From positions 45,151,911-45,189,246 of the forward strand of contig NC_068994.1 of assembly GCF_001194135.2 (NCBI RefSeq): 37,336 nucleotides of DNA. The letters run 5' to 3'. Shown here piece by piece: positions 1,958 through 37,336 of the stretch. The stretch's first letter is position 1; the number at the start of each line of letters is the position of its first letter. This DNA comes from Octopus bimaculoides. Taxonomy: Eukaryota. The position numbers were made by a program, and so were the translations under genes. The notes below the pieces were generated by a model. The model saw nothing but the letters and a program-made list of their open reading frames with translations. It did no database searches and was not told where the DNA came from.

Positions 1958-2338
1958 CTCTTTTACTCTCTTTTACTTGTTTCAGTCATTTGAGTGTGGC
2001 CATGCTGGAGCACCGCCTTTAGTTGAGCAAATCAACCCCAGGACGTATTCTTTGTAAGCCTAGTACTTAATTTATCAGTCTCTTTTGCTGAACTGCTAAG
2101 TTACGGGGACGTAAACACACCAGCATCGGTTGTCAAGCTATGTTGGGGGGACAGACACATACACACACACATACATACATACGACAGGCTTCTTTTAGTT
2201 TCCGTCTACCAAATCTACTCACAAGGCTTTGTTCGGCCCGAGGCTATAGTAGAAGACACTTGCCCAAGGTGTCACACAGTTGGACTGAACCTGGAACATG
2301 TGGTTCATAAGCAAGCTACTTACCACACAGCCACTCCT
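1958..2338 (-). mobile_element. tRNA-derived SINE family A, near full length
   Basis: Minus strand has a head AGGAGTGGCTGTGTGGTAAG with A/B-box-like motifs (GTTCAGTCC), a CCTTGGGCAAGTG core-like segment, an internal (TG)n, and a TGAAACAAGTAAAAGAG tail. Homologous to copies at 3361, 10821, 11635, 25900 and 33923. Confidence 0.88.
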
Positions 2339-3354: not shown

Positions 3355-3360
3355 CGCCTT

Positions 3361-3738
3361 TACCTTTTATCTTGTTTCAGTCACTGGATTTTACAGTCAT
3401 ACTGGAGCGCTGCCTTGAAGGGTTTAGTTGAACAAATCAGCTCCAGTGCTTATTTTTTAAGCTGGGTGCTTATTCTATTTGTCTCTTTTACTTAGCAGCT
3501 AAGTTATGGGGATGGAAACAAACCAACATAGTTGTCAAGCAGTGGTGGGGACAAGCACAGACACATATATAATGGGCTTCCACACAGTTTCTGTCTACCT
3601 ACCAAATTCACTCACAAGGCGTTGGTTGGCCTAGGGCTATAACAGAAGCTACTTGGCCAATGTACTGTGCTGTGAGATTGAGCCAAAACTGTGTGGTTGC
3701 AAAGCAAGCTTCTAACTACACAGTTGTGCCTGCTCCTG
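3361..3738 (-). mobile_element. SINE family A, older diverged full-length copy
   Basis: Collinear with 1958-2338 along its length; preceded by a poly-T run. Confidence 0.8.
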
Positions 3739-9710: not shown

Positions 9711-10120
9711 AAGAGTCAAAAGTGGGAACAGCATCTTATGGAGTGAATTCCTCAAGAAGCATTCAGTTCTTGCTGACATTCCATTCTGCCATCGAACTGC
9801 TTGATAAACAATGCATCAACAAAGACCCATCGGAGGAATCTTTTGCATACCAAGAAAATGTGATACAATGCTGTGTTTTTCGAAACTTGATATATGATTA
9901 CTAATATTGCGAGGAAGTGTAGCTATTACTTCATCACACTTTGAAAGTTGTGTTTTCACTATTCAAGTACAAATGGTGTCTACTAAATTACCTGTTGAAC
10001 AAAAATATTGTGAAGCTCATAACCCTGTAAGATGTGAACAAAACGTCACATATCTGTGGATCAGCAGCTAACAAAAAACATGAAAATATCTCCTTCCTAT
10101 ATAGAGTATCACATTGTCAG

Positions 10121-10355
10121 TAAAAGTCTTGTACCTTTATCAGAAGTCTTGTACCTTCATCAGAAGTCTTGTACCTTCATCAGAAGTCTTGTACCTTCAT
10201 CAGAAGTCTTGTACCTTCATCAGAAGTCTTGTACCTTCATCAGAAGTCTTGTACCTTCATCAGAAGTCTTGTACCTTCATCAGAAGTCTTGTACCTTCAT
10301 CAGAAGTCTTGTACCTTCATCAGAAGTCTTGTACCTTCACCAGAAGTCTTGTACC
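10121..10355. repeat. Minisatellite, 20-bp unit CAGAAGTCTTGTACCTTCAT, about 11.8 copies
   Basis: One variant unit (10121-10140), nine perfect units (10141-10320), one single-mismatch unit and a 15-nt partial unit. No spacers. Confidence 0.98.
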
Positions 10356-10820
10356 ATTTTTTTTTGAGGCTCAAGACTTTTCATACACCCCTCATACATA
10401 TATGCACACATAGACATAAATGCACAGACACACGCACACACACACACTTATATATGCACACATATATACTTATATATACAGATGCATATGTGTGTGTATA
10501 CACATACACACACATTACAACATATGAACGATTGGTGGAACACTCCAATCAAAATTTCCACTGAATGCAAACGTTACAGACCAGATACAGTTTTAGACAG
10601 AATAGAAGAATATATATATATGCTGTCGTAGTGGCAGTTGACTTATTTAATTTGATTCCAAATTAGTAATGAACAAAACATTTTAGCCACTTCAAGACCT
10701 ACAACTTTTCTTTGCAGATTCATAAATTTACATTTGTGTCTCTAATCATTGGCACAGTTAGTTATCATGCTAAATGTTTTAGTAGTTATCTAGAAAAGCT
10801 GGATTTTTCAATCCATCTAA

Positions 10821-10928
10821 CCGATAGAATAAGTACTAGGCTTACAAAGAATAAGTCCTGGGGTCGATTTGCTCGACTAAAGGCGGTGCTCCAGCATGGC
10901 CGCAGTCAAATGACTGAAACAAGTAAAG
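10821..10928 (+). mobile_element. SINE family A 3' fragment
   Basis: CCGATAGAATAAGTACTAGGCTTACAAAG...CCAGCATGGCCGCAGTCAAATGACTGAAACAAGTAAA is the reverse complement of the tail of the 1958 copy. It retains CpGs, suggesting a young insertion. Confidence 0.88.
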
Positions 10929-11634
10929 ATAAGGACAAAGAGAATTGTTTTAACCATTCTTGTGACTGTTATGAATATTGTCCTGAGAGGCTCAAGCTTC
11001 AGCATGGGTTTTCTAAATCCTTAAAATTCTATAGATTGCCCTTGAAGTACACCATTGTACTGTGAAGTGCTGTTTGAGAGCCCCTGCTCTAAGCCATAGT
11101 AAATGAATTCACACATGCACACTCATTCATGCCCTGACATATTTGAGCATTTACCCACTCACTTACACATTTACTCGTTTTCACTCTCACAAATCCTCCC
11201 ATTTATACTCCTAACATACACACTTTCACAGAGGCATGCATTTACTTATCACCATGCAATTTTACACCTCATCATACATTCACATGTACCCCACCATGCT
11301 CTCATCCTGCTATGAATATGATCATATCACATGCACATGTTCAACATGTCATATATATGCACACATTCCTGCTACATTTACACACATGCATATTCATGTT
11401 TACACTCACATAAATTCCCCCACACAAACATATGTAGAGAATCAAAATGAAAGAGGTAATTTAAAACCAGTTTGGTCTCATCATTGACTTCCTTAATTGA
11501 GAACAAGTTAAACATTGATAGTTAACCAATAAAAATAGAGATTTTTCTGGTGCTGTTGTCTACTATATTGAAATGTTTAAATGTTTTAGTTAGCCTGCCC
11601 TTGGTCTGTGATGACTGAGTTTGACAGCAGTTGT

Positions 11635-11727
11635 AAAGCAAATCGACCCCAGGACTTATTTTTTGTAAGCCTAGTACTTATTCTATCACTCTCTTTTGCT
11701 GAACTGTCAAGTTACAGGGACGTAAAC
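11635..11727 (-). mobile_element. SINE family A internal/3' fragment
   Basis: AGCAAATCGACCCCAGGACTTATT...GGGACGTAAAC matches the 1958 copy. Confidence 0.85.
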
Positions 11728-12109
11728 TATATTTTTATGAATAAAAATATAGTTACCATTGAGTTTTTATAAAAATATATAAATCAGATACAAAAATAAA
11801 ATATATAAAATATAGTTACCATTCAGGTAATCTTGATCCAAATAACTTATCAAAGCCATTCTAGTTGTGACTGTTTCAGCTTTGTTAGAATTATCAAGGA
11901 TTGCTTCACCCAAAGAACATATTTGTTCACTATTTTTAGTAGGTTGAGCAGTCATATTGAAGCTCTATCATTGACTCATTAAAATACCAGTGATACCATG
12001 CATTAAATAAAACCAATTCTCACAACCTTATTCTTTAAAAATTGTTCTTGTAGCTAATGAAAAGCTATTTTACTGAAATGCTTTTTTGTTTTCTCTTTCC
12101 TGTCTACAG

Positions 12110-12338
12110 GTTGAAAGTGCTGCAAATGTAGAAAGTATTTCCAAGAAAACACAAGAGCCCTCCTCACAATACTTAAAAGACCGTGATATCTGTTTAGCAT
12201 ACTTTGAACAGTGGTGTGAACATGACCAGGTGGAATTTGTACAGCTACTCTGTTCCCGCATGTGTCATTATCAACATGGTCAGATCAACACATTCCTTAA
12301 ACCTATGTTGCAGAGAGATTTTATTTCGGCCTTACCTG
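12110..12338 (+). CDS. BTRC: beta-TrCP/slimb (F-box/WD40 SCF substrate receptor), internal exon A: D (dimerisation) domain
   Basis: Pyrimidine tract plus CAG acceptor (AG 12108-12109). Translates [76 protein letters not shown], matching the beta-TrCP D-domain ([42 protein letters not shown]). Donor G|GTCAGT at 12339, phase 1. Confidence 0.96.
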
Positions 12339-13986
12339 GTCAGTATTTTGTTTCCAGATGGGAGACCTTCTTCTGGATTTTTTTGTTTGTTTTTTTCAAA
12401 ATTTTTATTTAAGCTTTTAAAATTTCTCTGTCATTATGTACATTAATTATGTACATTAAAAAAAAATGTCATTCACCATATCTTAACCACGTAAATATTT
12501 GTAGTTTTGTGGTTACCAGATCTTAATCTTTGAGGTATTTAATACAAAAATATACACAGTCAGCAGTCAAATAGTCATTTCCCACTGTTGAATAAAAATT
12601 ATCTCCTTATCTGTCTCTGTTTCCTACTTTTGTAATAGTTTTAGTTCTTGAGTACTTCCAGATGTTGGTAAGTATACTTGGTCAGTGCCCTGTAGCTTAT
12701 AGCTTATATAGCATAGTTTGCCAGGGCCTAGGGCTGCTGTTGGACTTTGGTTTAATTTAGCTGGTTCAACAAGAATGGTTGTTAAAATTATTGGGTTTTT
12801 AGAAATGATTTTAAGAAATTCAGAGCTCTACTGTATGACACCAATCTATTGTATGTTGGCATAGATCAGCAGTTGAATTGATACAAGTATTTGATTACTA
12901 CTTTGAGTTTACTGATACCCTCTCTGAACCACAGGAGGAAGCAAAACAGTGTCAACATTTCTGGGATTTAAGGAGAAAATGAATGAAAAAAACTGCAAAC
13001 CATTTAGTTCAATGTTCAAATCATTCTGTTGACTACCATTCTACAATATATATATAAATACATATTTATATTCATTTAACTTTTGTTTGCCATGCTGGTA
13101 TGGGTTATACGAGTATCACAGCATCTTGCCACCTGTTGTACCTTTATCTGGCATCTACAGTAACAAGAAAAAGAACAAAAAAACCTATCAAAGTTTGTTA
13201 GGTATGTTATGTTCTCCCTTTCCTATTTTTGCCCAGTAGACATTGGGTTGCAGATTTTTAGGATAGACTTCTGATCCGTCTGGAAAGGTTTTCAAAATCA
13301 TTGGCACTGTTCTTCATTTCCTAGAGCATAAAAGAACGGGTAATATTTTAAAGCCTATATTCAATATAAGAGATTGTATTTTTTTCCTTTTTTTGTGAGG
13401 AGAGTTTGAGTTTGCTGACCAATGCATGTTTTGTTTTTAGTAAACAACACATTCTTGTTAATGTGTTCTTACTGGTAGTAGGTTTATGCGGAAAGTGTTA
13501 ATTGGTTAAGGCTGGAGTAATGTTGCCACTTGTATACCCAACCCAGGTAACAGCAGACAAAGCAGTCGAGTGTATCCGAGCTTAACCAATCAATATTTGC
13601 CTGGCAAACACACAACTAGTTGGATATTGCACATGGCAGCTAATCTCACTCAGATACCGTCCACCTCTTAAAAATAAAAAAAATCTTGAATAAACTAATG
13701 CTTGATACCTGTTTGAATTAAAGACTGTGTAATCATAGCTAGAGTGCCTTCGATCCCAAGTTCACCCTATTGTGGTTGATCTATGGTTAGACAACAGCAC
13801 CAACAGAAATACATAGTTTAATCCTTACAGAGATCTTCCTAAATAACTATTGTATTTTTTTTTTTCTAATCTTGTATCAATAGTTTTCTTCTGGGACTTT
13901 TGTATTATTATTATTATTATTATCCTACTGTCTTTTTTTCTAAAAGACCCTTGTTGCTATGTTCAGTGTTTATGTTTGTTGTTTAG

Positions 13987-14173
13987 GCAAAGGACTCGAT
14001 CACATAGCAGAAAACATTCTCACATATTTGGATGCGAAGAGTTTATGTTCAGCAGAACTTGTTTGTAAAGAATGGTACCGAGTAATATCCGAAGGTATGT
14101 TATGGAAGAAATTAATTGAAAGAATGGTACGGACAGACACACTGTGGAGAGGCTTGGCTGAAAGACGAGGCTG
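13987..14173 (+). CDS. BTRC: beta-TrCP exon B: F-box domain
   Basis: TTTAG acceptor (AG 13985-13986). G+GC completes Gly, then [61 protein letters not shown], near-identical to the beta-TrCP F-box. Donor TG|GTGAGT at 14174, phase 2. Confidence 0.97.
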
Positions 14174-14439
14174 GTGAGTAAACCATCTTTTTGCTTTGTT
14201 GACATTTCCTTCTTCATACTTAACGCTATGTTCTCCATGCAGTGGGCAACCCTGGGAAATGTTCCCATGTCAATACTTTCTTTAGTTAAATCTCCTTTTT
14301 TGTACTTAACTGTTTCTTTCCCTACCCTCTAGCTCTTTCTCTTTTTCTCTCTTCCTGTAATTTACTTCTTCTGTCTCTCTTTGTATTGTATTTAACTCAC
14401 ACTCTTCTTCTTTGTTACACACACACACACTATTTTCTT

Positions 14440-14532: not shown

Positions 14533-14898
14533 ATATATATATATATACACATANNNNNNNNNNNNNNNNNNNNNNNNNNNNNNNNNNNNNNNNNNNNNNN
14601 NNNNNNNNNNNNNNNNNNNNNNNNNNNNNNNNNNNNNNNNNNNNNNNNNNNNNNNNNNNNNNNNNNNNNNNNNNNNNNNNNNNNNNNNNNNNNNNNNNNN
14701 NNNNNNNNNNNNNNNNNNNNNNNNNNNNNNNNNNNNNNNNNNNNNNNNNNNNNNNNNNNNNNNNNNNNNNNNNNNNNNNNNNNNNNNNNNNNNNNNNNNN
14801 NNNNNNNNNNNNNNNNNNNNNNNNNNNNNNNNNNNNNNNNNNNNNNNNNNNNNNNNNNNNNNNNNNNNNNNNNNNNNNNNNNNNNNNNNNNNNNNCAT

Positions 14899-15292: not shown

Positions 15293-15386
15293 GGGTCAGT
15301 ACTTATTTAGACCAAAATACTGTGAAACACCAAAAGACCACAAATTCTACAGATCATTGTACCCACAGATAATTGAAGATATTGAG
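15293..15386 (+). CDS. BTRC: beta-TrCP exon C: F-box to WD40 linker
   Basis: TTTCAG acceptor (AG 15291-15292). TG+G completes Trp, then GQYLFRPKYCETPKDHKFYRSLYPQIIEDIE. Donor GAG|GTGAGG at 15387, phase 0. Confidence 0.94.
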
Positions 15387-15794
15387 GTGAGGCACTCACA
15401 TTTTCTTGTTTGTCATTTGCTAAACCATGAAGGCCACAACATCTTATTCTTAATCTATAAAAAAGACCTTGCTCTGATAATTCTAGAACTTTTTTTTATC
15501 TCTTAGTAAAGAAACTTGAAACCATTATTAACCATAATTATAAAGGAATTGTACTACAGTAGATCAAGTTGTGGCACACTCTTGTTCAGTGCTTCAGGGT
15601 ATCTCGGTTCAAATTCTGCAGGGATGGCATTGATGTTTCTTTTTTTTTTTTTTTTACCTTCTAACCTTTTGTTTGTGGGGTTGTTGGGATAAGTAAAAAA
15701 AAAAGTGTATACATTTTGTTACATCAACTATATTACATATAATGGGGGAAAAATATTCTTAGGCCTAGTCAGTGGGAATAATTGATAATTTCAT

Positions 15795-15827
<33 letters not shown>

Positions 15828-16232
15828 NNNNNNNNNNNNNNNNNNNNNNNNNNNNNNNNNNNNNNNNNNNNNNNNNNNNNNNNNNNNNNNNNNNNNNNNN
15901 NNNNNNNNNNNNNNNNNNNNNNNNNNNNNNNNNNNNNNNNNNNNNNNNNNNNNNNNNNNNNNNNNNNNNNNNNNNNNNNNNNNNNNNNNNNNNNNNNNNN
16001 NNNNNNNNNNNNNNNNNNNNNNNNNNNNNNNNNNNNNNNNNNNNNNNNNNNNNNNNNNNNNNNNNNNNNNNNNNNNNNNNNNNNNNNNNNNNNNNNNNNN
16101 NNNNNNNNNNNNNNNNNNNNNNNNNNNNNNNNNNNNNNNNNNNNNNNNNNNNNNNNNNNNNNNNNNNNNNNNNNNNNNNNNNNNNNNNNNNNNNNNNNNN
16201 NNNNNNNNNNNNNNNNNNNNNNNNNNNNNNNN

Positions 16233-16609: not shown

Positions 16610-18479
16610 AAATTTATTTATTAAAATTTTTCTGATTAGGAAGCAGCTGGTTCAAACAAAGAAACAAAGCTCTATCACTGGAATTTGGATAACAATGATG
16701 AATATTATATGTTGCACTTTAGAAAAGTCTTCCATATCTTTACTATTCCACTTGCAGATTGTATTTGTAAAGTGTATATCAGACTGAAAATCTTAGTTTC
16801 TCCAGATTACTTAAGCATTTACTAGCATAAGCAAGTGCACCAATAATTATTGGTATAAGTGTGGATTTATAATCAGGGAAGCAGAGCTGAAGGCTTCAAA
16901 GCAGTTGTCCATAGATATTTTTTTTTCCAGTGTATTTAAGATATTCACATCTGCAGAGCAGCTGATCTCTGTGACTATGCATAATTTTTTTTTTCTCTCT
17001 GTCCCAAATAACTTTATCACTAGTAGAAGCTTTGATGGAAATGTTTCACTAATATTCCTTGAGTTGATATGTATGTATTCAGTAACATGTTATTTATATT
17101 TATCCCAGATGGCATTGTATATCGTTTCAACATCATGAAGGTAGTATCTTGATGAAATTTTTGGGCAACTGCTGATCATATGAATTATGTTCTCCAGAAG
17201 AGTGACGTAATTGACATTTACAGTCGCACCTTCGGACTTTAAGGTTTTCACTTTCTCATTTGCTCAGATATATTCTAGTCTTCTCTAGTTCTAGAATTGC
17301 AAGAGCATAACTTTCAAGGCTTGGTGTCATTTAAGAGTCACAAGTTCAAATGCGGCTACATTTCTTGTTAATATTATCATCCACTTCAAGGCAGCCAGCT
17401 GGCAGAATGGTTAGCACACCAGGCAGATGCTTAGTGGCATTTCATTTGTCTTTATGTTCTGAGTTCAAATACCGCCCGAGTTCTCACTTTAAATTCTAAC
17501 TTCGCCTTTCATCATTTCATAAGTACCAGTTGAGCACTGGGGTTGATGTAGGCAATTTACCCCCTCCCTTGAAATTACTGGCCTTGTGCCAAAGCGTGAA
17601 ACCAATATTATCTCTTTCAAATTTACATGAAACATACTCATGCATAAACTTTTTGTAGTATGCAGTGTGTTTTGTTTCTAAGACTTTCCAAGTCCTACAC
17701 TTCTGGGTTCATATGGGAAGCCAGCAGAAAGTGATTGCTTCTTGAGGAGTTCACTTCTGACCTGCAGGATGTTATTACTTTTAAACACTTGATTGCTGTT
17801 CTTTTGTTTCTGTCATTCAGCAGATGTTGTCTGAGTGATACCATACAGCACTCAAAGGCTGTAAGCACTAATCTTAAGCCTCTTCTTTTTCATCTAAGAT
17901 AAACTGTCAGTATCATTGTTTCTATGGAAGTTAAGTTTGCTATTTGATGTCAAGATCTTGAGAGGTTTTATGTCCTTGGAACGGATTTCCTCTGTAAACT
18001 AGTCAAGTATCCCAAATGTTGGTAATAGTGGAATACTGTCTTGTAACAATAAAGCTCTGATTGTGATATCTTCAGTCTGGTACAATGTTTGGTTACTATT
18101 TGTTCATGGCACCTTTGTATGACATAATTTCATCAATAGTTAGGTACTTGTAGTACTGTGTGGAGCAAAGGAGATTGAGAGGTCACTGGTGCAAAGCTTT
18201 CTGGTTTGACTAACTGTTTTACTTCATTCAGTAATGCTTCTTTTAGCCAAATTCTATTGCTACTTCATCAGAAAATGTTGTGACTAAATCCAGCTGTTTC
18301 TCAGTATTGTAAATATTTTTGAGCATAGATCTTTAGATTCTGAAAAGAAATTATCGATTACATGAGTGCTTGGCGTAAATCCCAGAACATTACCAATGAC
18401 TTTTTATGCAAGATTTAACTGGATTTAAGGTTGAAATATACTGTAGTGCAGGCAGACTGTTGCTTTGGAACACTCCCTA
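16610..18479 (-). mobile_element. 5'-truncated, decayed non-LTR retrotransposon with a restriction-like endonuclease (R4/Dong-like); SINE inserted at 17388-17611
   Basis: Collinear relics: GVFQSNSL (RT QGD motif), NLKIYA (DDLKLYA), LDLVTTFSDEVAIEFG, YKYLTIDE, LPTFGILD, NFHRNNDTD, LESYALAILE, CDCKCQL..HMISSCPKISSRYY (CCHC knuckle), VIWDREKKKLCIVTEISC (RLE), IPIIIGAL, GIVKIWKTFLK. The 3' boundary is approximate. Confidence 0.85.
17388..17611 (+). mobile_element. tRNA-derived SINE family B, inserted in the RLE-type LINE
   Basis: GCTGGCAGAATGGTTAGCAC (A-box-like), GAGTTCAAATACC (B-box-like), AAGTACCAGTTGAGCACTGGGGTTGATG, GGCCTTGTGCCAAA tail. Confidence 0.85.
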
Positions 18480-18880
18480 TGTGTGTGAAAGCCCTGTTCC
18501 ATGAGACCCAATGTGCATGCGCGCGTGCACACACACACACATACACGCAAAGGCTACGTATATTATAAAATGTCAATGATCATCCTTTGTATTTTGTTTT
18601 ATTTTTATTGTATTTGTGTTAAATTCAAAGTTTTGTTTCCAGGTTAACTTCCAGAATGGTTCCTGATAGTCCTCCAGGAAGATTTGAACCCTGTTTTGTG
18701 GTCAGAATGTTGTCTGTACTTGAAATGAAGTGGGGGACACATTTTTGATATCCCCTCTTGAAACATCCCTTTTGCAAGATGTATCTTTTTGCTTGTCTTT
18801 TTGGAGATCAGTTTGTGTGTGTGTGTATATATATANNNNNNNNNNNNNNNNNNNNNNNNNNNNNNNNNNNNNNNNNNNNN

Positions 18881-20616: not shown

Positions 20617-20626
20617 NNNNNNNNNN

Positions 20627-26005: not shown

Positions 26006-26779
26006 TACTTTTACTTGATGATATCAACTAACTGCCTTCCATCAAAATCATTGACTGGCATTGGTGAAAATCAACTGGTTCGTCTTTCCTGAAGGATTTT
26101 CATGCTGGAGCCAATGGATAATTTTCAGAAATCCTTGGCCTGGCAGTGCTACTGGAAGTTATTGCTAGTTTGGGATAATTATACAGACGTGGTAATGCTG
26201 TCTGCTGCACTTGCTGAAGATGAGCACAGAGCGATGAAACCATTCTGCATGGGCTTCTACAGTGCTTGGCCATTGCTAAATTGTATAGTTATGTTGAACA
26301 GCTACTATCATGTGTAGAATGGATCCAGCTATCAACTGATTCCATGGGAAAAATCGCTCCACTGTCTTCTTTGGCGAAGATGGGCTGGCAGTTTTCCTTT
26401 CCTGTGTCTGGTTGTTATGGCAAAAGAGGTTGTGTGATTGACATGACTGAAAGGACCGAAGACAAACACTCCTTTTTGGTTAAGCCTTCCTTGACTTTTC
26501 CAGGTTTCGCTTTGAAAGGAAAGTGAGAGTAGAGAGGGAGATGCTTGAACTATGTGCCTTTGGGCTGAAAAATTATGGAGAGAAAGGAATACTTGTCATG
26601 CTGCTCTTGGTGAGCAGGGTAACTTGGGATCTGTGAGGTTCCTTGGTTACACAAGGATTGCATCATTATCTTCAAATTTTTTCGTCTCCTTGTATGCCGT
26701 ATATCGTTACACTTTCAGTCATTACTTTTGTTCAATGTATACTATTGAGTTGAACTTTTGCTGTGGTCATCATTGCTTT

Positions 26780-27081
26780 TCATCCTTTTGGGATCAATAA
26801 AATAAAGGGCCAGTCTGGGGTTGAAGTAATTGTCTTGCCCCTATCCTGAAAATTGTTGGTTTTGTGCCAAAATTTGAAACCATTATTATTCAGTGGCATT
26901 TTGTCGGTCTTTATGTTGAGTTCAAAACCTGCTGAGATCAACTTTGCTTTTCACCTTTTTTTTCAGAGTAGATCGAATAAGTACCAGTGTCATACTGGCA
27001 TCAATGCAATTGACTTACCCCATCCCCCAAATTGCTGGCCTTGTGCCAAAATTTGAAATCATCATCATTATTATTATTATT
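26780..27081 (+). mobile_element. Two tandem SINE family B copies ending 27 nt before exon D
   Basis: Two successive TTGTGCCAAAATTTGAAA tails (about 26862-26890 and 27041-27081). The second copy has a GAGTTCAAAACC B-box-like motif and an (ATC/ATT)n tail. Confidence 0.82.
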
Positions 27082-27108
27082 AAAGCAATCTTTATTAACC
27101 TGTTTCAG

Positions 27109-27246
27109 AGAATTGAGAATAACTGGAGGACGGGCCAACACACACTACAGCGGATTCACTGTAGAAGCGAAACTAGTAAAGGAGTGTATTGCCTTCAGTA
27201 CGATGACCAGAAGATTGTTAGTGGCTTAAGAGACAATACGATTAAG
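27109..27246 (+). CDS. BTRC: beta-TrCP exon D: linker end and first WD40 repeat
   Basis: TTTCAG acceptor (AG 27107-27108). [46 protein letters not shown] is nearly identical to vertebrate beta-TrCP WD1. Donor AAG|GTAAGT at 27247, phase 0. The gene continues beyond this exon; the next exon was not found in the window. Confidence 0.97.
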
Positions 27247-27447
27247 GTAAGTATTTCATTCCGAACCCTCCTCTCCCAACTTCCACCACTTTTATCCATT
27301 TTTTTTTAAAAATGGAAATTTTGCTATATTTTGTTTTGTATTCATATATGTTTGTAGATGTGTACTTGATAGTCTGTGTCAAAGGGGTGGGAGGGTGCCT
27401 TGATTTTTTTAGAGATATTAGAAGACCTGCATACATCATACCCACAT

Positions 27448-27481
<34 letters not shown>

Positions 27482-27684
27482 CAAAGTAACAAACACATGC
27501 ACACATGAAATTTGATTCATTACTGAATAAAAATGACATAACTAGCAATACTACTACTACTACTACTGTTAATAATAGTTTCTTACATTGACACAAAGCC
27601 ATTTTTGTAGTGGGTGGGGGGATGTGGTTGTCAAGTAAATTAACTATAGTACTTGGTTGGTAACTGAATTTGTTGACCTCTGGA

Positions 27685-28500
27685 AGGTATCGATCCCTTT
27701 TGGGAATGATAAAATAAAGTACCAGTCAAGTACTGGGGTTGATGTAATTGACATATCTCCTCCTCTCAAAATTGCTGGTTTTGTGCCAAAATTAGAACTA
27801 TCATCATTATTAGTTAAGAACGTGATGGATGACAGACTTGGTGGAATGATGGGCGAAATGCCTTTATAGTATCATCTCTTTGTATGAGTCAATGAGGAAG
27901 CCTCTATGTGGTTGCTTGACCTGCTAGAAATAGCAGCAAAATTATGCTTAAGTCACTTTCATCCCTACTCTGCAGTATTACAATATTCATAGCTAAAACA
28001 CACTTGATCACAGGTCAGTGCATTCTGCTGACAAGGGGCTAAAAAAACAAGGCCTCTTTACATTGTGATCAACTCTGCTTTTTATTCCCCTCGAGTCAAT
28101 ACAATAGGTACTTGTTTAATAGTGGATGATTGATTTAACTGGCTGTACCCCTCCCCCTCCCTATCAAAATATCATCTTGGTGCCAAAGTTAGAAATTATT
28201 TAGTTGTCTCTGTTTTGAGTTCAATTCCTGTTGAAGTTTGACTTGGCCTTTTCATAACTCTGGGGTTGAAATAAAAAGAAAAGAAAAAAAAAAGGACCAT
28301 TTGTGTGCAGCAGTCTTGATTCAAATAGATTTGTTACTTGGTGCTAATGTAAGAAATTATTGTTATTGTGTCATGTTGGCAGATAAATAAGTGTTGGTCT
28401 AAATGCCTTTTAAACTATTCAGTTTTGTTCTAATTTTTAGATTTCAAATCCTGCCAGAGTAGCTTTTGCCTTATATTGTTATGGTTTGATGAAATAATTT
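27685..28500 (+). mobile_element. Cluster of degenerate SINE fragments (family B pieces plus one family E copy at about 27880-28050)
   Basis: Repeated GTACCAGTCAAGTACTGGGGTTGATG and GTGCCAAA..AGAA motifs; CTTGACCTGCTAGAAATAGCAGC and GGGGCTAAAAAAACAA motifs. Confidence 0.65.
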
Positions 28501-29409
28501 CAAGTCGTGTATTTTGTGATTGTCCAAAATGGGCTTGTACTAAGTTAAAATAAATTTATTATCATAATTAGTAATATTATTATTATTAATAGTAATATTC
28601 TCTGTGAATAAATACAAATACCAATTTTAAAATTATTTTATTTTTATATCATCATCATTATTATTATTATTATTATTGTGATTATTACAATGGAATAAAC
28701 CCTTTAAAAAAAAGACTTAGAAAAATTAAGGTTTTACGAGATAGATTATGCAATTTCCAAATTTTTAGAAGAAATTATTAGAAAGATTATTTTCCTCAAT
28801 CTGATTCAAAATTTTAAAAACACCAAAAATTCCTAAATTCTCATAGATTTCAATGTCTCAAAAAAAGAAAACCATTTTTATTTTTAGATTTACCAATATC
28901 CATGTAAGGAAGATTCGAATATTAAGGTTAGACCACTTTCGCTTGTAGTCTTGCTCCTATGTTTATACATACATACATATATATGCATACACATGTACAT
29001 ATAAAACATACACACATATATGCACACACATACAAACATGCACATGCATATACATACATGCATATACATACACAAGCATCCCCCACATTACAGAATTCTA
29101 CATTCCTGGAAAATCTTGGCATAATGCAGAATTTTGTAATGTGAAACTTATTTTCCCATTGATTTCCATGTTATAAATTGAGATGTTCTGATGGAATTTT
29201 TTTTTGTTTTTTTTTTGTTGGGGAGGGAATCAACAACAAAACATATTTTGATCAATTTTATGCATGAAAGTGATTTTTTTTTCAAACACATGGAACTGTA
29301 TTTATACATGAAAACATTTGAAGAGAAGTACATAAGGGAATGAATAGAATGCATTAATATAGTAAAATAGGAACTCACTACCAAAAAAAAAAAAAAAGAC
29401 AGGAAAGAA

Positions 29410-30515
29410 AAGAAAAAAAATTGACTGCTGTGTTGCAATGAAGACTTACTGGAAGGATGAAAAGCACTGTCTTCTGCCCTGTGGATCATAATTATAATCA
29501 TCCACTTCAGTAACGAAAAATGTACACAAAGCTGTGTAATATTTACAATGCTTTATTTCTTAGTAAGACTCAGTGTAGGAACGGAGCTCATTATGAACTC
29601 CTCTTGGCCATATTCTTTACAGCCAATTGAAATAGTGTGGGTGGAGCTTCTGTATCCTCTTCTTGCCATGTGGCCCTCTCTCTTAGTCTAAAAGCATCAG
29701 CTCTTTGTTTGACAAGCATTCTCTATTTGACTCGCATAACTCAACCACATCCCCTGCAACTTCTTCAAGCCCTGTATCATTTGTCAATCACAGTATCTTA
29801 CTGAACTTGTAGACTTTCTGCTGGTGGAAGGCCTGTACGGTCAGGAATACAGTCTAGCTATGTTTTGCCAAATGCCATTTATAAATTCAAAATTTTCCCC
29901 CAGTAGTCGCTTACTGCAGTGTTATCCTCCTCATAAATTACATTTATGTATTGTTTTAAAATTCTATTCATAACTCTTCTATGCCTTGAAATTAGCTATC
30001 ACACTTTGACCCATTGGCTGGAGCAAAGAAGTTCTTCTCTTAGGGTTGTATTCTGCTCTCACATTATCAGAGAGATCATTTAAGCTCACTGGGTATTCTT
30101 GGTACATTGTGTAAAAGAGCAGCATTTTTTTTTGGAACTATTATGCCTGGCATTATACTTTTCTAAAGCAGAGCAAAAAATGTTTATAAGCCAGTCTTGG
30201 AAACATTTGTAGTCATCCCAGCTTTTTTTAATTTTTTATTTGAATCCCTAATCACAGATCAATTAAACCTGTAGTCCATGGAGGACTTTAGATTTCCAGA
30301 ATAAGGGCTTTAATTTCATATCACTGGTAGCCTTTCATCCCACTAGAAGTGTTAGGGAGTTTTTGAAAGCTTACAGCCTACTATTGATTTATTTCACATA
30401 GAAATGAAAGTCCTAGCATATGCACTTCCAGAAAAGCGTAGTCTCATCAACCTTGTTTATTTGTTCTTGTTTGTGACCTCCTTCAGCAATAATTTTCTTC
30501 AGTTCCTCAGGATAA
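29410..30515 (-). mobile_element. Second decayed pogo/Tigger (Tigger1-like) transposase, DDE region to C-terminus
   Basis: YPEELKKIIAEGGHKQEQINKVDETTLFWK (first catalytic D), ARTFISM*NKS, LTLLVG*KATSDMKLKPL, FQDWLINIFCSALEKY, TSLLQPMGQSVIANFKA, INGIWQN, GLEEVAGDVVELCESNRECLSNKELMLLD, all collinear, with many stops and frameshifts. Confidence 0.88.
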
Positions 30516-31122
30516 GTAAATAAAATAGAAAAATGAAAGGGTGGAGAAGTGATATTGAAAAGTGGGAGCTGTATGATATGGGAGAAATAATGTATTGTTA
30601 AATCTAGTAACAAGACTCAGGGCAAGAATGCTGAGAGCAGTGAAAAAAACACGGTCATTTGAATTGATGCGGGCACAAACAAGGACTGGGTAGAAGAGAG
30701 TGTGAATAGTTGTTTGCAAGAAAGTTGAGATGTATGTAGAACAGGGTACTGTGGAAGAGGAGGGTATGGCTTGGTGTTGGCAAGAATGTTGAGGACAATA
30801 AAACTATAAAAAAGTTTGTAGGAGACAAAAACTGATAAATTTTAAATAATCAATTGGTAGACTAAGCAACAAAAATTTCAGTGAATGGAGACAGGAAAAT
30901 GAGAAAAATTGTTGATTGTATTCATGTATCGTACCAAGTATCTATTTCTAGAAAGAAATTGTGCATGTGTGTGTGTTGCATGGATTTTGATTTTTAGTTT
31001 TTGAAATTAAAGTTTCCATGAGGGTGGAATTACAAGCTCTATCTTTAAATTAGTGGTCATACTTTACAATTTCCCTTAGTGTAAAATTCTGTAACTAGAG
31101 ATTTTCATAACAAGGTGTATGC

Positions 31123-31175
<53 letters not shown>

Positions 31176-32830
31176 ATGCATGCACACGCATGGATATATA
31201 TGTACATGTACACAGTGTGCATATGTGTGTTTGTGTGTACATCATACACATGTACATGTCTGTATGTATACAGTACCTCAATATGACCCATAGGCAGCTT
31301 TAGCAGAGTTGACTGTGCTGCAAGCATTTGAACTAGGTCTCTGGTTGGAAGATAACTTCCTTCTACCAGTCCCACAGGCTCTAAAATGGGTCAAGACCAC
31401 TGCCCTTGCTCCTTCATGTCATTTTAGACACACGCACTATTGGACACACACACACACACACACTCATTCATTCACACTTACTCTCACATACATTCATTTA
31501 CACTTACTCACACACAATCACTTTCTCTTTCTTTCTCTGTCTTTCTGTCTTTCTCACATGCACTCACAGTGAATCTTTTGTTAAACTGTACTAATAATAG
31601 TGAGGAATGGTGTCTGTCTAACCTGAGTAAACCAGTGATAGGAGTTTAAAATTGTGATATCGAAAATATATGAAATTTAAGCTGCACATGATAAACAGTA
31701 ACAAAATTACTGAAAATACTGTAAGCATCCTATAATTTTATATAAAATATATCTATATATTATAAATTCATTTAACATTCTAGTATGTAAAAATCGAGAA
31801 GTTATAACTGTAAATTAATTTCATTTACTTGCAGTAGATACCAGTGGAGCTTGATGTAGTCTAGGTAGGGGTGAGGGTAGGGGTGATAACTTGTCATTAA
31901 GTACTGTGAGAGCTATGATGCTCTGCTAATCCTTACCTCTTAAACAGAAATCTGATTTGACGGTGAAGGATTGAGCTAACAGTAAGTAGGTCATCGATAT
32001 CAGCAGCAGCGTTGTGACAAATTGGCCTGAGGAATAAGTTGGAGTTTCAGTTGTTTAATCTTACTGAAACTACTTGTGGATAATGAGTTGCTATAAGACT
32101 TTTAACGATATCAATAATATTGCTAAACATTTGTTTCTGTTGACGAGTGATTATATGAACTGACAAGCCATGATCTATGTCAGATCATCCTCTGCTTTCA
32201 AGCCAGGTTTTGACATTCTCTTGTGTGACATCATCTCACCTGTTCTCTCTGAAGTTTATTATAAAAATCCCTTGTGTTCAATTCTTCAAAATATGTATTC
32301 TACTTCCACATTCTGCACAGGTCTTTCCCAAGCATTGATTACAGTAGTACACTTCAGTATCTTCCATGAGGCTGCAAAATTGGTTGCAGTTCTTGAGCCA
32401 CTGAGAATTTTTTCTTCTCGTGGTTTTTCTTAGATTGTCCTCTTGTCATAAGAACTTTGTTCACACACTTTCACTGCTACAATGTCTTACAGGCTGCAAT
32501 TACATTTTGAGTCATTGGCTAGACTCTGGATGTGACATTTGAGTGGCAAGAAGTGAACAGGTGCATTGTTCAAAATTAATATCTTAAAAGAATGATTGAC
32601 AATATACACTCTCAGTAAGTAATGTGAGAAAACCAGTCATTCAAGATGTGCACATTGAACCATGGTGATAATGACCTGATAGCCGGTGCATAACATCTTT
32701 CGAAGTTGCAAATGAACTGAACTTCTCCACCACCAACACTAACTTTAAAAGGCGCTTACTATCTGCATTCATGCAACACAGTACCACAAAACATTTCTTA
32801 ATTTGTGACTCGGTGTGGATGTTTCTTTAA

Positions 32831-33052
32831 CTCTTTAACATTTAAATCAACTACATCTGGCCCAAATATTTAACCCATTCTATGTTCAAACTGGCCAGAT
32901 CCAGTCTATCACACCTACCCTACAATGTCATTCTAAAAATAAACAATTACATCATCGAAATCTTGAAACTATGAAATAATGCATGATAAACCATGAAATA
33001 AACCATGAATAAATAAGCATTACATTTGACAGTAATCTGAGTGCTAAAGGGG
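32831..33052. mobile_element. piggyBac-like MITE with TTAA target-site duplication
   Basis: TTAA at 32827-32830 and at 33053-33056. Termini CTCTTTAACATT and GTGCTAAAGGGG are a degenerate inverted pair of the CCCTTTAGCA type. Removing it rejoins the Tigger transposase motifs. Confidence 0.8.
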
Positions 33053-33552
33053 TTAAAGTTGGGTATTCTGGGATAGTGAGCGCTTATGCCACCCAGCTTC
33101 GTTCTTCATATTTAAATCGTTTCATCTCTCCCCGAATGTTTCGATGGCCTTGATTTATACACTACCTGATTTGTTGTGGGCAATTTTGCTGCTCAATCAA
33201 GAAGTTTGAAGTTTGTGACGGGTGGTTGTCATTGTTTAAATTGCCACAGCCGTATGTCACTTGCTGGAAATTTTTTAATTGCATATACTTAGCTAGTTTG
33301 GTAGCAGTTCTTTGAATTTCCATACCACAAACATCGTTACCCACAAGATCATTGATGCATGCACTGTTGTTACTGTCTCCTCGGAATTTGCTTATTTTTC
33401 AACTGTCCTACACCTTCTTGCACTAGTTGATGGCAATTTATAATTAGCATCAGCATTAAATTTTCAAGAACCTGCAGTGAGTTTTTATTTAGTCTTGCAA
33501 ACGTCTGAAGCTATATGCTTTTTATCAGCATACGCTTTGCAGATTCTCACCA

Positions 33553-33714
33553 ATATACAAGTTGCCCTCCTTCTCCAAGGTCTAAGTCTGTAGCATCAAT
33601 GAAACCAACAGGAAAGTTAGCTTCTTCATTTTCATATGTCAGAAACTTGAAGGTGTCCTTTGTAAACTCTGGTTGTACGTCATTGACATTGGTAATTTGG
33701 ATAGAAAATTTCCT
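33553..33714 (-). pseudogene. Isolated protocadherin fragment (end of one cadherin repeat and start of the next)
   Basis: RKFSIQITNVNDVQPEFTKDTFKFLTYENEEANFPVGFIDATDLDLGEGGQLVY (54 codons, no stop). Shows the cadherin DxNDxxPxF linker (NVNDVQPEF), the xEN motif (YEN) and AxDxD (ATDLD). The wording resembles octopus-type protocadherins as I recall them. No other cadherin sequence was seen nearby. Confidence 0.88.
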
Positions 33715-33922
33715 TAGAAATTCCAGTCTGTTCTGTATTATCCTTGAAGCCGTGATGTAAAGTAAAAAGCTGACCATTGCCCAATCATTGAAATAGCAAC
33801 AAACAATGCAGGGCAACGCAACTTGTTTTGTAGTATATGGTAGTTACTGTCACAGAGTGCACTCTGCTACTATACTAAACATGCTACTATGGAATTAATA
33901 TTGCTGAAAAATAAACAAATGT

Positions 33923-34175
33923 AGGCGCAGACGTGGCTGTGTGGTAAGAAGCTTGCTTATCAACCACATGGCTTCGAGTTCAGTCCCACTGCATGGCACC
34001 TTGGCCAAGTGTCTTCTACTGTAGCCTTGGGCCGACCAAAGCCTTGTGAGTGGATTTGGTCGACAGAAACTGAAAGAAGCCTGTCATATATGTATGTTTG
34101 TGTGTCTGGTGTGTTTACATTCCTGTAACTTAGCAGTTTGGCAAAATAGACCAATAGAATAAGTATGAGGCTTAC
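33923..34175 (+). mobile_element. SINE family A, 5' two-thirds
   Basis: AGGCGCAGACGTGGCTGTGTGGTAAGAAGCTTGC...GAGTTCAGTCCC...CCTTGGCCAAGTGTC...GAAACTGAAAGAAGC; tRNA-like head. Confidence 0.88.
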
Positions 34176-34834
34176 TTTAGTTTTGGAAATCAAATCTCAT
34201 TACCAATTTTCACCTTGAAAGTGTAGTGTTTATTAGAGGGAGTGCAAAAGTGAATAAGAAACACACATTACTTGTATATATGTAACAGGTTAAATACAGG
34301 TAGAAAGAAGTAGGGTGATGGAGGAGGTATGAACGAATTTAAATAGCAGATGGATTAAGATGTTAGTTAGGTGGGGTTCCGCAGAGCACTAGAAAGAAAA
34401 CATTTTAAATGTAAATGCAAATAATAAACACAATGCAAACTGGTAAACTGTCACTCATTTCAAGTCCTTATTTTGTCACTATTCCAGTATGCTGCTACCT
34501 GGCCAGTACATATAAAATTAGCCGGAAGAAGGTATTAGTGAAGTAACTGTCACAATAGTTCATAACAGGGAACAGAAGTGTTAGTTTTCCATAAGGTTTA
34601 TATTATTGAATGGTCTTAAAATTTATGATAAATTTGTCATCTTTGCTGTGTGTTGCACTTACTTACCCAGTGCACCCAGAGAATACCCCCTCCTCCCCTT
34701 ACAACACTAATAATCAAAGACAGTGGCAGAAACCATCACTGACAGTCAGTTTTCTTAACTCAAATTTTGTCCAGTTTGTCCTATATCCAACCTAACAGGG
34801 TGTGGTTTAACAAGGGTTCACTGTGTGCTCGTGC

Positions 34835-34903
34835 CCACACACACACACACACACTCCCTCTCTCATACACATACACACACACAATATCTCTCTCACACAC
34901 ACA

Positions 34904-34937
<34 letters not shown>

Positions 34938-34995
34938 ATCTCTCTCTCATACACACACACAAACAATCTCTCTCTCTCACACACACACACACACC
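34835..34995. repeat. Compound (CA)n-AT-(CT)n tandem microsatellite
   Basis: Several CACACACAATCTCTCTC-like units in tandem. Confidence 0.9.
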
Positions 34996-35850
34996 TCCTT
35001 TTGTCTGGAGATTCCTTTACCTAACACTGTTACTACTACTATAATTATTACTGTTATTCTAAATGATAACCCTAGAATAATTATTACAACTATTAACTAC
35101 CAGTACTGCTACTACTACTACTACTACTTGTCAAGCATTTTTCAATAACTGCTTTTTTGTCTCTTTTTGTATTTTATAAAATTTTGATTTTCTTATAATT
35201 CTTAGAATAGTAACATACAGACACACACACACATTCTCTCTCTCTCTCATTTACTTACTCTCTACTTCTCATTGATTTTTTTTTCTCTTCCTGCTTACTG
35301 ACTTTCACCTACCACACTCTCTATTACTGTTGTCTCTTACTGTTTGATTTACTATCTCTCTTTGTCTTACTGTCTCTCTTTTACTGTTGTTCCCCCCCCC
35401 CCCTACTCTCTACCTTACTGCCTCTTTCATTTTTACTGTTGATTAGTTTGTCTCTGTGTTACTCTCTCTCTCTCTCTTTGGTTGCTATCACTTGTCTCTT
35501 GTCTGTGTCTCTCTTTCTCTCAGCTAGCAAGCTGAAGTGAAAAGCACAATATTGTGGTAGACTCTTCAAAGTATACAAGTAACATTGACTAACTTGCAGA
35601 CGATACATTGTACAATAAACTTTGGGTTTTAAGCGTTCATATCTTTATTCCTGTGGTTCTTAGTTGTACTTAGCTCTGTATGCATTACCATAGATGTGAA
35701 ACTACTTAATTTGACAAAATTTCGCACTAGTTCAAATCCACTGCAGGCTGTCCCATTCATATAATTGGGGAGGCAGTTAACTTAAATCTACATTGCCTCC
35801 AGTTACTGAACTTTCTGGAACAACAACAACAACAATAATAATAATAATAA

Positions 35851-36061
35851 TTTCAAATTTTGGCACAAGGCCTGAAGTTTTTGGGGTGGGGACTAGTCGA
35901 TTACATCAACCCTAGTGCATAACTGGTGCTTATTCCATCGACCCTGAAAGGATGAAAGGCAAAGTTGAGCATGGCGGAATTTGAACTCAGAACATAAAGA
36001 TGGATGAAATGCTGCTAAGCATTTTACCTGGCATGCTAATGATTCTACCAGCTCGCCACCT
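35851..36061 (-). mobile_element. SINE family B, full length, with an (ATT)n/(GTT)n tail
   Basis: Reverse complement of the 17388 copy; a simple-repeat tail lies just before it at about 35819-35850. Confidence 0.87.
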
Positions 36062-37336
36062 GAATGATAATAATAATAGGTACTAGACGAAAATAGGGGC
36101 AACTGAAGTTCAGTATGGGCTTGATTAATTTTAGGTATCTATTCAAGAATGAGGGGTAGGCACTAGTTTCTTCTGAGTGAGTGAAAGGTAAGCAGTCGTG
36201 TCTTCTGAGGATGCTGTGATGGATGAAGGATTAGTATTAGCCCCTCTTATGTCTTGCCAATGATAACCTGTCATTTCATCCAAAATCAATAAGGCATATG
36301 TGGGATGGGAAAGGGGTGGATGGGTTGGAATGGGTATCTTGATCCATTTCTGATACATTTTAATGGATGTATATTCTGGAGCTTAGTCCTTCTTGTCTAA
36401 CAAGTCTGACTGGTCTGAGGACTTTCATATTTTATGTATAAGAAGGAAACAAAGACTGAAACTAATTAATAGACAAACATGTCATAATGTATAGTTTAAT
36501 TGTTATTGTTGAGCGGCCTTCTTCTCGACCAACTCAATTAGCCTCAGAAATCTATGGTGTGGAGTTGGCTGATGGAATAACTTACAAACTGCAAGTCCAG
36601 CACACTCTCTGTAATAATGGAGCAGGTTACAAATATGTGTGCTGTGTTTGTTCAAATTGAATCATTCTGTTGGCTTTTTGGATATGGCTGCTCTTCAGCC
36701 CCATCCCTACATCTTCTTGTTGCTTGGCCTGGGTCAGGTTTGGAGAAGTATGTTGTCTGAAAGCAACTTTTTGTTCCTGAGTTTTTAGTCTGTAGTGCTG
36801 AGCAAGTCAAGCAACCACTTAGAACCTCCTTTAATAAGCTTATTGTAGGTCATCATTACTTTAAAAAGGCTTGGAGTGGTAGGTGAGTAATTTGGTTGTT
36901 ACACTGAGCAGGCAAAAAAAAAAAAACAAGATAGAAAAATCCCTTGCTTATTAATGTGGGCTTCCATTTGAAATACAGCTAAGAATTTTGTGTAAGAGAT
37001 AGGAACAGTGAGGTGGAAAGAGATATGGTGAGAGAGAGAAAGTTTGGTTGTGATACATCTAAATTGAGTTGTTTCATTTTAACATTTACTACTAATTAAT
37101 AATCTATTTTACTAATTATTCTTGTCAATATGCTACATTTTTCACATAATTTTGCTCTAGAATATTAACTTCTCTTTACTCAAGTTAACTTCTCTTACTA
37201 TAATTTCTTAAATTATATACACACATATGTATGTATGTATATATGTGTATAATTTAGCATTCTGCCTTATTCTTCATTTTCCTATTATTTCTCCACGTGT
37301 GGTTAACACAACCCCACTATTTACTGACTTATATAT

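What the first reader, a model, noticed from the sequence alone, without database searches (positions are those of the whole stretch)
33540..33753. Protocadherin gene fragment captured inside a Tigger/pogo transposase
Seen: on the minus strand the relic transposase starts (T)ASRIIQNRLEFLRK, continues in the same frame into 54 stop-free codons of cadherin sequence (RKFSIQITNVNDVQPEF...ATDLDLGEGGQLVY), then resumes after a frameshift as transposase HTH (VRICKAYADKKH...). The AGGAAA (RK) at 33714-33709 fits both partners, like a microhomology junction, and a few HTH residues appear to be replaced. Known: DNA transposons can pick up host sequence during gap repair (Pack-type elements), and protocadherins are greatly expanded in coleoid cephalopods. 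Inference: a host protocadherin piece was captured by a pogo element. If the chimera transposed afterwards, it would be a vehicle dispersing protocadherin sequence, which I am not aware of being described. The insert also looks less decayed than the flanking transposase, suggesting it arrived later.
Basis: partly seen in the sequence, partly recalled or inferred. Interest (0 to 1): 0.8.

Follow-up and report, generated by a model that had tools for sequence, protein, structure and literature searches.

The report
Stray protocadherin fragment in octopus intron
A 162-base piece copied from the middle of an octopus protocadherin gene really does sit alone in a repeat-rich intron of another gene, but the tests possible here do not show that a pogo transposon captured it, so it is most likely an ordinary one-off DNA-repair patch.

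Summary
The cadherin half of the finding is confirmed. Window 33714-33553 (minus strand) encodes 54 stop-free codons that are 67-74% identical to the EC4/EC5 boundary of octopod clustered protocadherins; generic cadherins reach only about 44%. Similarity starts and stops sharply. No other part of a protocadherin is in the window. In three paralogues the homologous DNA lies inside one uninterrupted exon. Codon-position statistics show almost no neutral decay.

The transposase half is not confirmed. That test has low power for N-terminal domains. A real but very decayed pogo/Tigger DDE relic does lie 0.7 kb downstream in the same orientation (32830-32150, z 7-9), so the fragment could lie in that element's former 5' part. 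No inverted repeats, target-site duplication, poly(A) or additional copies were found.

The locus is antisense in a 10-kb-plus intron of a beta-TrCP-like gene. The best reading is a single templated patch insertion of a known kind. A mobile pogo-protocadherin chimera is unsupported but not excluded.

The parts
33553..33714 (-). Protocadherin-derived fragment: 54 codons (RKFSIQITNVNDVQPEF...GEGGQLVY). It covers the last strand of EC4, the DxNDxxPxF-type linker and the first half of EC5, corresponding to residues ~445-512 of ~850-1160-aa octopod protocadherins.
   Evidence: 67-74% aa identity to O. vulgaris, O. sinensis, O. bimaculoides and Argonauta protocadherins. (sharp nucleotide-level borders). 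(codon-position pattern).
33550..33843 (-). Stop-free frame of 98 codons that contains the fragment. It has an in-frame ATG (MVSFLL..., 76 aa) and ends TGG TGA. The text TTG|GTGAGA at 33551/33550 and CTAAG|G at 33713/33712 would delimit a 162-nt symmetric potential exon.
   Evidence: No annotated or predicted protein in the collections carries it.
33715..33910 (-). Upstream flank, unassigned. No detectable transposase similarity.
   Evidence: Pfam and PDB nothing; z about 0. No copies in L001-L005.
33057..33552 (-). Downstream flank, unassigned. If relic A was once full length, its HTH and early DDE region would have been here, but nothing is detectable.
   Evidence: The geometry argument is inference.
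32798..33056 (.). Dispersed octopus repeat inserted between the DDE relic and the fragment.
   Evidence: 73-81% identity to L003 29860-30115, L005 4036-4274 and L004 7-58.
32150..32830 (-). Relic A: a very decayed pogo/Tigger DDE transposase remnant. Segments: CFVVLCCMNADSKRLLKLVLV 32793-32731, WFNVHILNDWF 32662-32630, FKILILNNAPVH 32588-32553, SNVTSRV*PMTQNVIAACKT 32542-32483.
   Evidence: 32 control windows reach at most z 2.9 and raw score 135. Pfam alone does not detect it.
29603..30514 (-). Relic B: a separate, better-preserved Tigger transposase remnant in the same intron. It is context and the positive control, not part of the fragment.
   Evidence: tblastn with P0274 (tigger transposable element-derived protein 1-like, Homarus americanus) E=1.3e-28. 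Pfam DDE_1 E=0.008.
33911..34175 (-). Octopus SINE copy immediately upstream (minus sense) of the unassigned flank.
   Evidence: 83-92% identity to many copies in L003/L004 and to window 2054-2338.
27250..37336 (+). Intron (at least 10 kb, running off the window) of a beta-TrCP/FBXW11-like F-box/WD40 gene. The fragment lies in it, antisense.
   Evidence: exons at 13986-14174 (89% to the human F-box region), 15294-15404 and 27103-27249. No later WD40 exons are in the window.

Best explanation
A ~162-bp stretch was copied once from the interior of the large ectodomain exon of an octopod clustered protocadherin gene. The donor is a paralogue not among those I could sample. The copy was pasted into repeat-rich intronic DNA of a beta-TrCP-like gene, most likely as a templated patch filling a chromosomal double-strand break (end-joining or synthesis-dependent repair with a template switch to a distant DNA or RNA template). 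It is a non-functional half-domain fragment. It may happen to lie in the eroded 5' part of an old pogo/Tigger copy whose DDE remnant is 0.7 kb away, but the transposon was probably already dead and played no active part. Shown: the identity, borders, isolation and low decay of the fragment; the intronic antisense context; the absence of retro-insertion hallmarks. Inferred: the repair mechanism, single-copy status and the relative age of fragment and relic.
For: Identity and family. Sharp borders, with paralogue genomic DNA reading straight through both borders inside one exon (L002 10001-12982 is a single 2,982-bp exon). No other protocadherin piece in 37 kb. Divergence from paralogues is third-position dominated (pS 0.85-0.96, pN 0.14-0.17), as between functional paralogues, and only 4 of 32 paralogue-invariant residues are changed. 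So there has been little time as neutral DNA (rough upper bound ~5% per site, with a wide interval). No target-site duplication, poly(A) or A/T run at either junction. No inverted repeats bracketing the region. Flanks not recognisable as transposase. No second copy in the window or in 180 kb of octopus loci. Short templated insertions from distant loci at breaks, lacking TSD and poly(A), are a documented class (PMC5110952). Filler capture at breaks is also documented (PMC2567098, PMC1976456).
Against: The empty site and the true donor were not available, so the junction signatures expected of end-joining (microhomology, microdeletion) could not be examined. Copy number in the source genome is untested. 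The geometry fits a location inside relic A. Counting back from the DDE start (~32795), through the 259-bp repeat, places Tigger residue ~46 at ~33540, next to the 3' junction. There is also a by-eye resemblance of SRIIQ...LRK and KKHIASD to the CENP-B-type HTH. A transposon-linked origin therefore cannot be dismissed. The N-terminal test has low power: even the well-preserved relic B shows no clear N-terminal signal (z<=2.3).
Confidence: 0.6

Rival explanations
1. A pogo/Tigger element acquired the protocadherin piece during transposition-linked gap repair (interrupted synthesis with a template switch), replacing a few HTH codons. The chimera may then have transposed, spreading protocadherin sequence (a Pack-type pogo).
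For: A real pogo/Tigger DDE relic lies 0.7 kb downstream in the same orientation. Its spacing is compatible with the fragment lying in the element's N-terminal coding region (inference). There is a weak by-eye HTH resemblance. Host-fragment capture by DNA transposons is known, including in animals (PMC2572040, PMC3597677, PMC4224331).
Against: The flanks have no statistical similarity to any transposase N-terminus. No TIRs or TA duplication were found. The fragment looks much fresher than the barely recognisable relic, which argues that it arrived in a dead element. No other copies were seen in any data I could reach.
Confidence: 0.12
2. It is the last remnant of a larger protocadherin duplicate or retrocopy that once sat in this intron and was whittled down by deletions and repeat insertions.
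For: The intron is riddled with SINEs, a dispersed repeat and two Tigger relics, so turnover is high. The single-exon donor genes make DNA copies and retrocopies look alike.
Against: Both borders are sharp, and there is no residual homology anywhere else in 37 kb even at E<=10. The fragment shows too little neutral decay to have lived through two large clean deletions. An internal piece without a 3' end or poly(A) is atypical for a retrocopy.
Confidence: 0.1
3. The 162 nt are a functional or exonised exon, or part of a small ORF, of an antisense transcript. The low decay would then be due to selection, not youth.
For: The frame is intact. A strong donor-like TTG|GTGAGA sits exactly at the 3' border and an AG at the 5' border, giving a 162-nt symmetric unit. 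There is a 76-aa ATG ORF with a hydrophobic start. The codon-position pattern resembles purifying selection.
Against: Half an EC domain cannot fold by itself. There are no partner cadherin exons in the window. The acceptor has a poor pyrimidine tract. No annotated or predicted protein in the 15-billion-sequence collection contains it; the best match is 74%. The Ca2+-binding D of the DxND motif is changed to N.
Confidence: 0.04
4. It is an assembly or read chimera that joins protocadherin sequence to unrelated intronic sequence.
For: The window has five N-runs, so it comes from a gapped assembly. Large paralogous families are prone to mis-joins.
Against: The nearest gap (20617-20626) is 13 kb away. 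A chimera would normally carry a near-identical copy of a real gene and a longer stretch, not 162 bp that is only ~70-76% identical in nucleotides to the sampled paralogues.
Confidence: 0.03

Closest known systems
Class 2 templated sequence insertions (DNA or RNA 'patches' at double-strand breaks; Onozawa et al., reviewed in PMC5110952)
   Same: A short stretch copied from a distant locus, inserted at an unrelated site, with no target-site duplication, no poly(A) and the donor family retained. It can include coding sequence.
   Different: These were described in human cells and populations, not cephalopods. Here the empty site and the exact donor are unknown, so junction microhomology or microdeletion and RNA versus DNA templating cannot be assessed.
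Filler DNA / NUMT-type capture during end joining (PMC2567098, PMC1976456)
   Same: An unrelated DNA fragment is used to seal a break, as a one-off event that is neutral afterwards.
   Different: The source here is a nuclear protocadherin gene, not organellar or extrachromosomal DNA.
Transduplication / Pack-type DNA transposons (Pack-MULEs in plants; Turmoil-1 in C. elegans, PMC2572040; host fragments in TE consensus sequences, PMC3597677)
   Same: A host coding fragment is embedded in (possibly) transposon-derived sequence.
   Different: The defining features were not found here: no TIRs, no multiple copies with shared junctions, and no recognisable transposon sequence abutting the fragment.
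Helitron gene-fragment capture in animals (bats, PMC4224331)
   Same: Short pieces of host genes dispersed into introns by a DNA element.
   Different: No Helitron hallmarks were looked for beyond repeats and protein domains, and none were seen. The only transposase remnants nearby are pogo/Tigger type.

Membership tests
Octopod clustered protocadherin (cadherin superfamily) | Extracellular cadherin repeat sequence with inter-domain Ca2+ linker motifs (DxNDxxPxF; AxDxDxGxN) | tested here: met
   the match spans the linker and first half of an EC repeat. The linker reads NVNDVQPEF (first D changed to N) and ATDLDLGEGG is present.
Octopod clustered protocadherin (cadherin superfamily) | Closest relatives are octopod protocadherins of the single-chromosome arrays, well above generic cadherins | tested here: met
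   67-74% identity to P0139, P0113, P0130 and P0137, named protocadherin in O. vulgaris, O. sinensis, O. bimaculoides and Argonauta. The next-best cadherins reach 44%. Array organisation is from PMC9795677.
Octopod clustered protocadherin (cadherin superfamily) | A complete gene: signal peptide, about six EC repeats, a transmembrane segment and a tail | tested here: not met
   Only 54 codons are present and no other piece is in the window. It is a fragment, not a gene member.
pogo/Tigger DNA transposon (as the host of the insert) | DDE_1-type catalytic domain | tested here: met
   Met for relic A at 32830-32150 only (z 5.2-8.9; controls <=2.9). This is 0.7 kb from the fragment, not adjacent to it.
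   There is no signal with Pfam, PDB or the chain test (z about 0). The same probes also fail on the well-preserved relic B (z<=2.3), so power is low.
pogo/Tigger DNA transposon (as the host of the insert) | Terminal inverted repeats with TA target-site duplication bounding the element | tested here: not met
   only short, imperfect inverted pairs typical of chance, and none at plausible element ends.
Pack-type / transduplicating element | Several dispersed copies sharing the same host-fragment junctions | not testable with these tools
   The source genome is not searchable here. There are no copies in the window or in 180 kb of octopus loci, and no related short ORFs in the protein collections.
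Class 2 templated sequence insertion | A short insert templated from a distant locus, with no TSD, no poly(A) and no endonuclease-site preference | tested here: met
   A 162-bp internal gene piece. The longest word shared between the flanks is 5 nt and lies far from the junctions, and there are no A/T runs of 6 or more within 150 nt.
Class 2 templated sequence insertion | End-joining signatures at the junctions relative to the empty site (microhomology, microdeletion, untemplated bases) | not testable with these tools
   This needs the orthologous empty site and the true donor. Neither could be fetched.
LINE-mediated retrocopy / class 1 insertion | 3' end of the transcript with a poly(A) tail and a target-site duplication | tested here: not met
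   The fragment is from the middle of the coding sequence.
Bona fide exon | Splice signals plus partner exons or an annotated product | tested here: not met
   GT and AG dinucleotides are present at the borders. There are no partner exons and no product in the collections. In the paralogue genes there is no intron at either border.

The most novel reading that the evidence does not exclude
The fragment and its flanks are one copy of a multi-copy, non-autonomous pogo/Tigger derivative that picked up a protocadherin EC4/EC5 piece and spread it through an octopod genome. That would be a Pack-type pogo element in an animal, seeding cadherin-coding modules with ready-made splice-like borders into introns.
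Probability: 0.05. Interest if true: 0.6.

Novelty: new member of a known kind. Interest (0 to 1): 0.2.

Why it matters
As it stands this is a small, probably neutral scar: one more example of a short gene piece pasted into a break. It shows that such templated patches occur in cephalopod germlines and that the hugely expanded protocadherin family can act as donor. It would matter more only if the genome search shows many copies with the same junctions (gene-fragment capture by a pogo element in an animal) or if the piece is spliced into transcripts. Practically, it is a caution for annotation. Isolated, intact-looking cadherin pieces in octopus introns can seed spurious 'protocadherin-like' gene models.

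Tried and rejected
(1) Plain exon of a nested cadherin gene, suggested by TTG|GTGAGA at the 3' border. Rejected: there are no partner exons, paralogue genes have no intron at either border, and no product is known.
(2) Chance cadherin resemblance. Rejected.
(3) Pfam on the 54-aa and 89-aa peptides. Only Cadherin_4 at E=0.1, because the piece straddles two domains; superseded by the PDB and exhaustive searches.
(4) Word-index search with the short peptide found nothing. With an alignment it returned only short proteins, the best being O. bimaculoides 'protocadherin beta-2-like' at 65%.
(5) My own by-eye reading of a CENP-B-like HTH in another frame (QLFTLHHGFKDNTEQTGISKEIF) and a hand-stitched 330-aa 'relic A' protein. 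No Pfam support, and it recruited nothing in the database search, so I treat it as unproven.
(6) Plus-strand Tigger-like words (KKFEVCDGWLSLFK at 33199-33240, LVIWIEN at 33689-33793). Not collinear, E 4-9, treated as noise.
(7) Relics A and B as one element. Rejected: both contain the same DDE region.
(8) Recent donor among the sampled genes. Rejected: only ~70-76% nucleotide identity in BLAST alignments and 66-70% over the full codon alignment.
(9) Fetching this locus, its orthologues or extra copies by exact-ORF look-ups failed.
(10) Rfam and tRNA scans of the window found nothing.
(11) My first negative-control loop was faulty: reseeding made it repeat one position. It was redone properly.

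Full report
WHAT IS IN THE SEQUENCE. On the minus strand there is a stop-free frame of 98 codons (33843-33550). It reads ...TASRIIQNRLEFLRKFSIQITNVNDVQPEFTKDTFKFLTYENEEANFPVGFIDATDLDLGEGGQLVYW and then a stop. The peptide VRICKAYADKKHIASD follows in another frame at 33550-33503.

THE CADHERIN PART IS REAL. Pfam alone gave only a sub-threshold Cadherin_4 hit, because the piece straddles two domains. Against all PDB sequences the 53-aa peptide matched 126 cadherin chains (CELSR1, clustered protocadherins, cadherin-23). The alignments run from the end of one EC repeat, through the DxNDxxPxF linker, to the AxDxDxGxNGxxxY region of the next. An exhaustive HMMER scan of 1.8 billion representatives gave 2,794 hits at E<=1e-3. 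Re-ranking by best single alignment, four proteins of 852-1162 aa stand apart at 67-74% identity over 54-58 residues, against about 44% for any other cadherin. They are annotated protocadherins of Octopus vulgaris, O. sinensis, O. bimaculoides and Argonauta hians, all on the protocadherin-array chromosome (organisation as in PMC9795677). The match is to their residues ~445-512, the EC4/EC5 boundary.

IT IS AN ISOLATED, SHARPLY BOUNDED INTERNAL FRAGMENT. Full-length tblastn of those proteins against the window finds no other piece, even at E<=10. I fetched genomic loci for three paralogues (L002, L003/L004, L005). In L002 the whole 993-aa protein is one 2,982-bp exon. In all three, the genomic DNA reads straight through both positions that correspond to the fragment's ends. 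Sliding nucleotide identity is 0.6-0.9 inside 33714-33553 and falls to 0.1-0.4 outside on both sides. The fragment's ends are therefore not inherited exon ends. The splice-donor-like GTGAGA just after it is not donor-gene intron.

AGE AND STATE. Nucleotide identity to the sampled paralogues is only 66-70% over the full codon alignment and 70-76% in BLAST alignments, so none of them is the donor. The differences fall 10-14 / 6-7 / 31-35 at codon positions 1/2/3. Synonymous sites are saturated (pS 0.85-0.96) and pN is 0.14-0.17, the same as paralogue-versus-paralogue comparisons (pS 0.77-1.07, pN 0.12-0.20). Nearly all the divergence therefore accumulated under purifying selection in a functional, unsampled donor lineage. 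Little has been added since the piece became free DNA. Of 32 residues invariant among four paralogues, four differ (V to I, D to N in the Ca2+ linker motif, N to D, P to L). That gives a rough upper bound of about 5% neutral divergence, with a wide interval (inference).

CONTEXT. The window is octopod DNA: its SINEs match copies in the Octopus loci at 80-92%. No later WD40 exons are in the window. So 27250 to the window end is one long intron, and the fragment lies in it, antisense. The intron also holds SINEs (for example 33911-34175), a dispersed repeat at 32798-33056, microsatellites and two transposase relics.

THE TRANSPOSASE CLAIM. Relic B (30514-29603, minus strand) is unmistakably Tigger. 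tblastn with a real lobster 'tigger transposable element-derived protein 1-like' (P0274, obtained) gives E=1.3e-28, and Pfam DDE_1 gives E=0.008. For the region next to the fragment I wrote a frameshift-tolerant collinear-chain aligner and compared scores with shuffled-query nulls. Its opposite strand gives z=0.7, and 32 control windows give mean z 0.35 and maximum 2.9 (the first control loop was faulty and was redone). So a second, very decayed pogo/Tigger DDE relic (A) is real.

THE FLANKS THEMSELVES. The sequences that actually touch the fragment (33715-33900, 33300-33552 and 33057-33552) give z between -1.6 and +0.9 against Tigger residues 1-165 or 40-216, the CENP-B N-terminus (from memory) and P0274. 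PDB finds nothing. A database search baited with relics A and B recruited a hit only through B. No terminal inverted repeats bracket the region.

POWER CAVEAT. The same probes do not clearly detect an N-terminal domain upstream of the well-preserved relic B either (z<=2.3). The negative result is therefore inconclusive rather than proof of absence. Two things keep 'inside a dead Tigger' alive. First, counting back from the DDE start (~32795) through the inserted repeat places Tigger residue ~46 near 33540, right at the 3' junction. Second, by eye SRIIQ..LRK and KKHIASD resemble CENP-B's KSRIIQEVEENPDLRK and KRAILASE. Both are inference and memory, and neither is statistically supported.

MECHANISM. 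There is no target-site duplication and no poly(A) or A/T run at either junction, and the piece is from the middle of the coding sequence. That argues against a LINE-mediated retrocopy. A short, clean, internal piece with little decay also argues against the eroded remnant of a larger duplicate. The pattern fits the documented class of templated sequence insertions or filler DNA at double-strand breaks (PMC5110952, PMC2567098, PMC1976456). It requires, however, that the flanks were a mobilisable element at the time. The contrast between a fresh fragment and a barely recognisable relic argues against that. Capture of host fragments by DNA transposons is known in plants and in a few animal cases (PMC2572040, PMC3597677, PMC4224331).

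COPY NUMBER. I found no second copy in the window or in about 180 kb of octopus loci, and no related ORF in the protein collections. I could not search the source genome or fetch the orthologous intron. This remains the key open test.

VERDICT. The most likely explanation is a one-off templated patch of protocadherin sequence in a transposon-littered intron (confidence about 0.6). The mobile pogo-protocadherin chimera is given about 0.05. This is an ordinary phenomenon in a new organism and gene family, of low to moderate interest.

Noticed in passing
window 12077-12409, 13986-14174, 15294-15404, 27103-27249 (+): Exons of a beta-TrCP/FBXW11 (slimb)-like F-box/WD40 gene. The F-box exon is 89% identical to the human protein. 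Introns are very long (about 12 kb and more than 10 kb).
   Followed up: partly
window 29603-30514 (-): A second, much better preserved Tigger transposase relic (42-61% identity to a Homarus americanus Tigger-derived protein, with several stops and frameshifts). Its N-terminal DNA-binding region is missing or undetectable.
   Followed up: yes
window 1958-2338, 3356-3723, 10820-10939, 11665-11727, 33911-34175: Copies of one abundant octopus SINE family (80-92% identical to many copies in the O. sinensis and O. vulgaris loci). No tRNA or Rfam match to its head.
   Followed up: partly
P0130 residues 946-970 versus window 10851-10916 and 1983-2048: The annotated cytoplasmic tail of O. bimaculoides 'protocadherin beta-15 isoform X1' contains a stretch (CGHAGAPPSRVLVDHIDPSAYF) that matches the translation of this SINE at 60-64%. 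This suggests an exonised SINE or a gene-model artefact.
   Followed up: no
window 17362-17611, 26746-27077, 35827-36078: A second dispersed repeat family shared with all octopus loci (70-81% identity). One copy abuts the WD40 exon at 27103.
   Followed up: no
window 10038-10410 (+): A tandem array with a 60-nt period that translates as repeated SLVPSSEVLYLHQKSCTFIR units, followed by a CA/TA-rich microsatellite.
   Followed up: no
window 5839-5848, 14554-14895, 15828-16232, 18836-18880, 20617-20626: Runs of N (assembly gaps). Two of them flank the small exon at 15294-15404, so the gene structure there may be incomplete.
   Followed up: no
window 33550-33780 (-): An ATG-initiated 76-aa ORF (MVSFLLYITAS...) with a hydrophobic start runs into the cadherin fragment. 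This is probably coincidental.
   Followed up: partly
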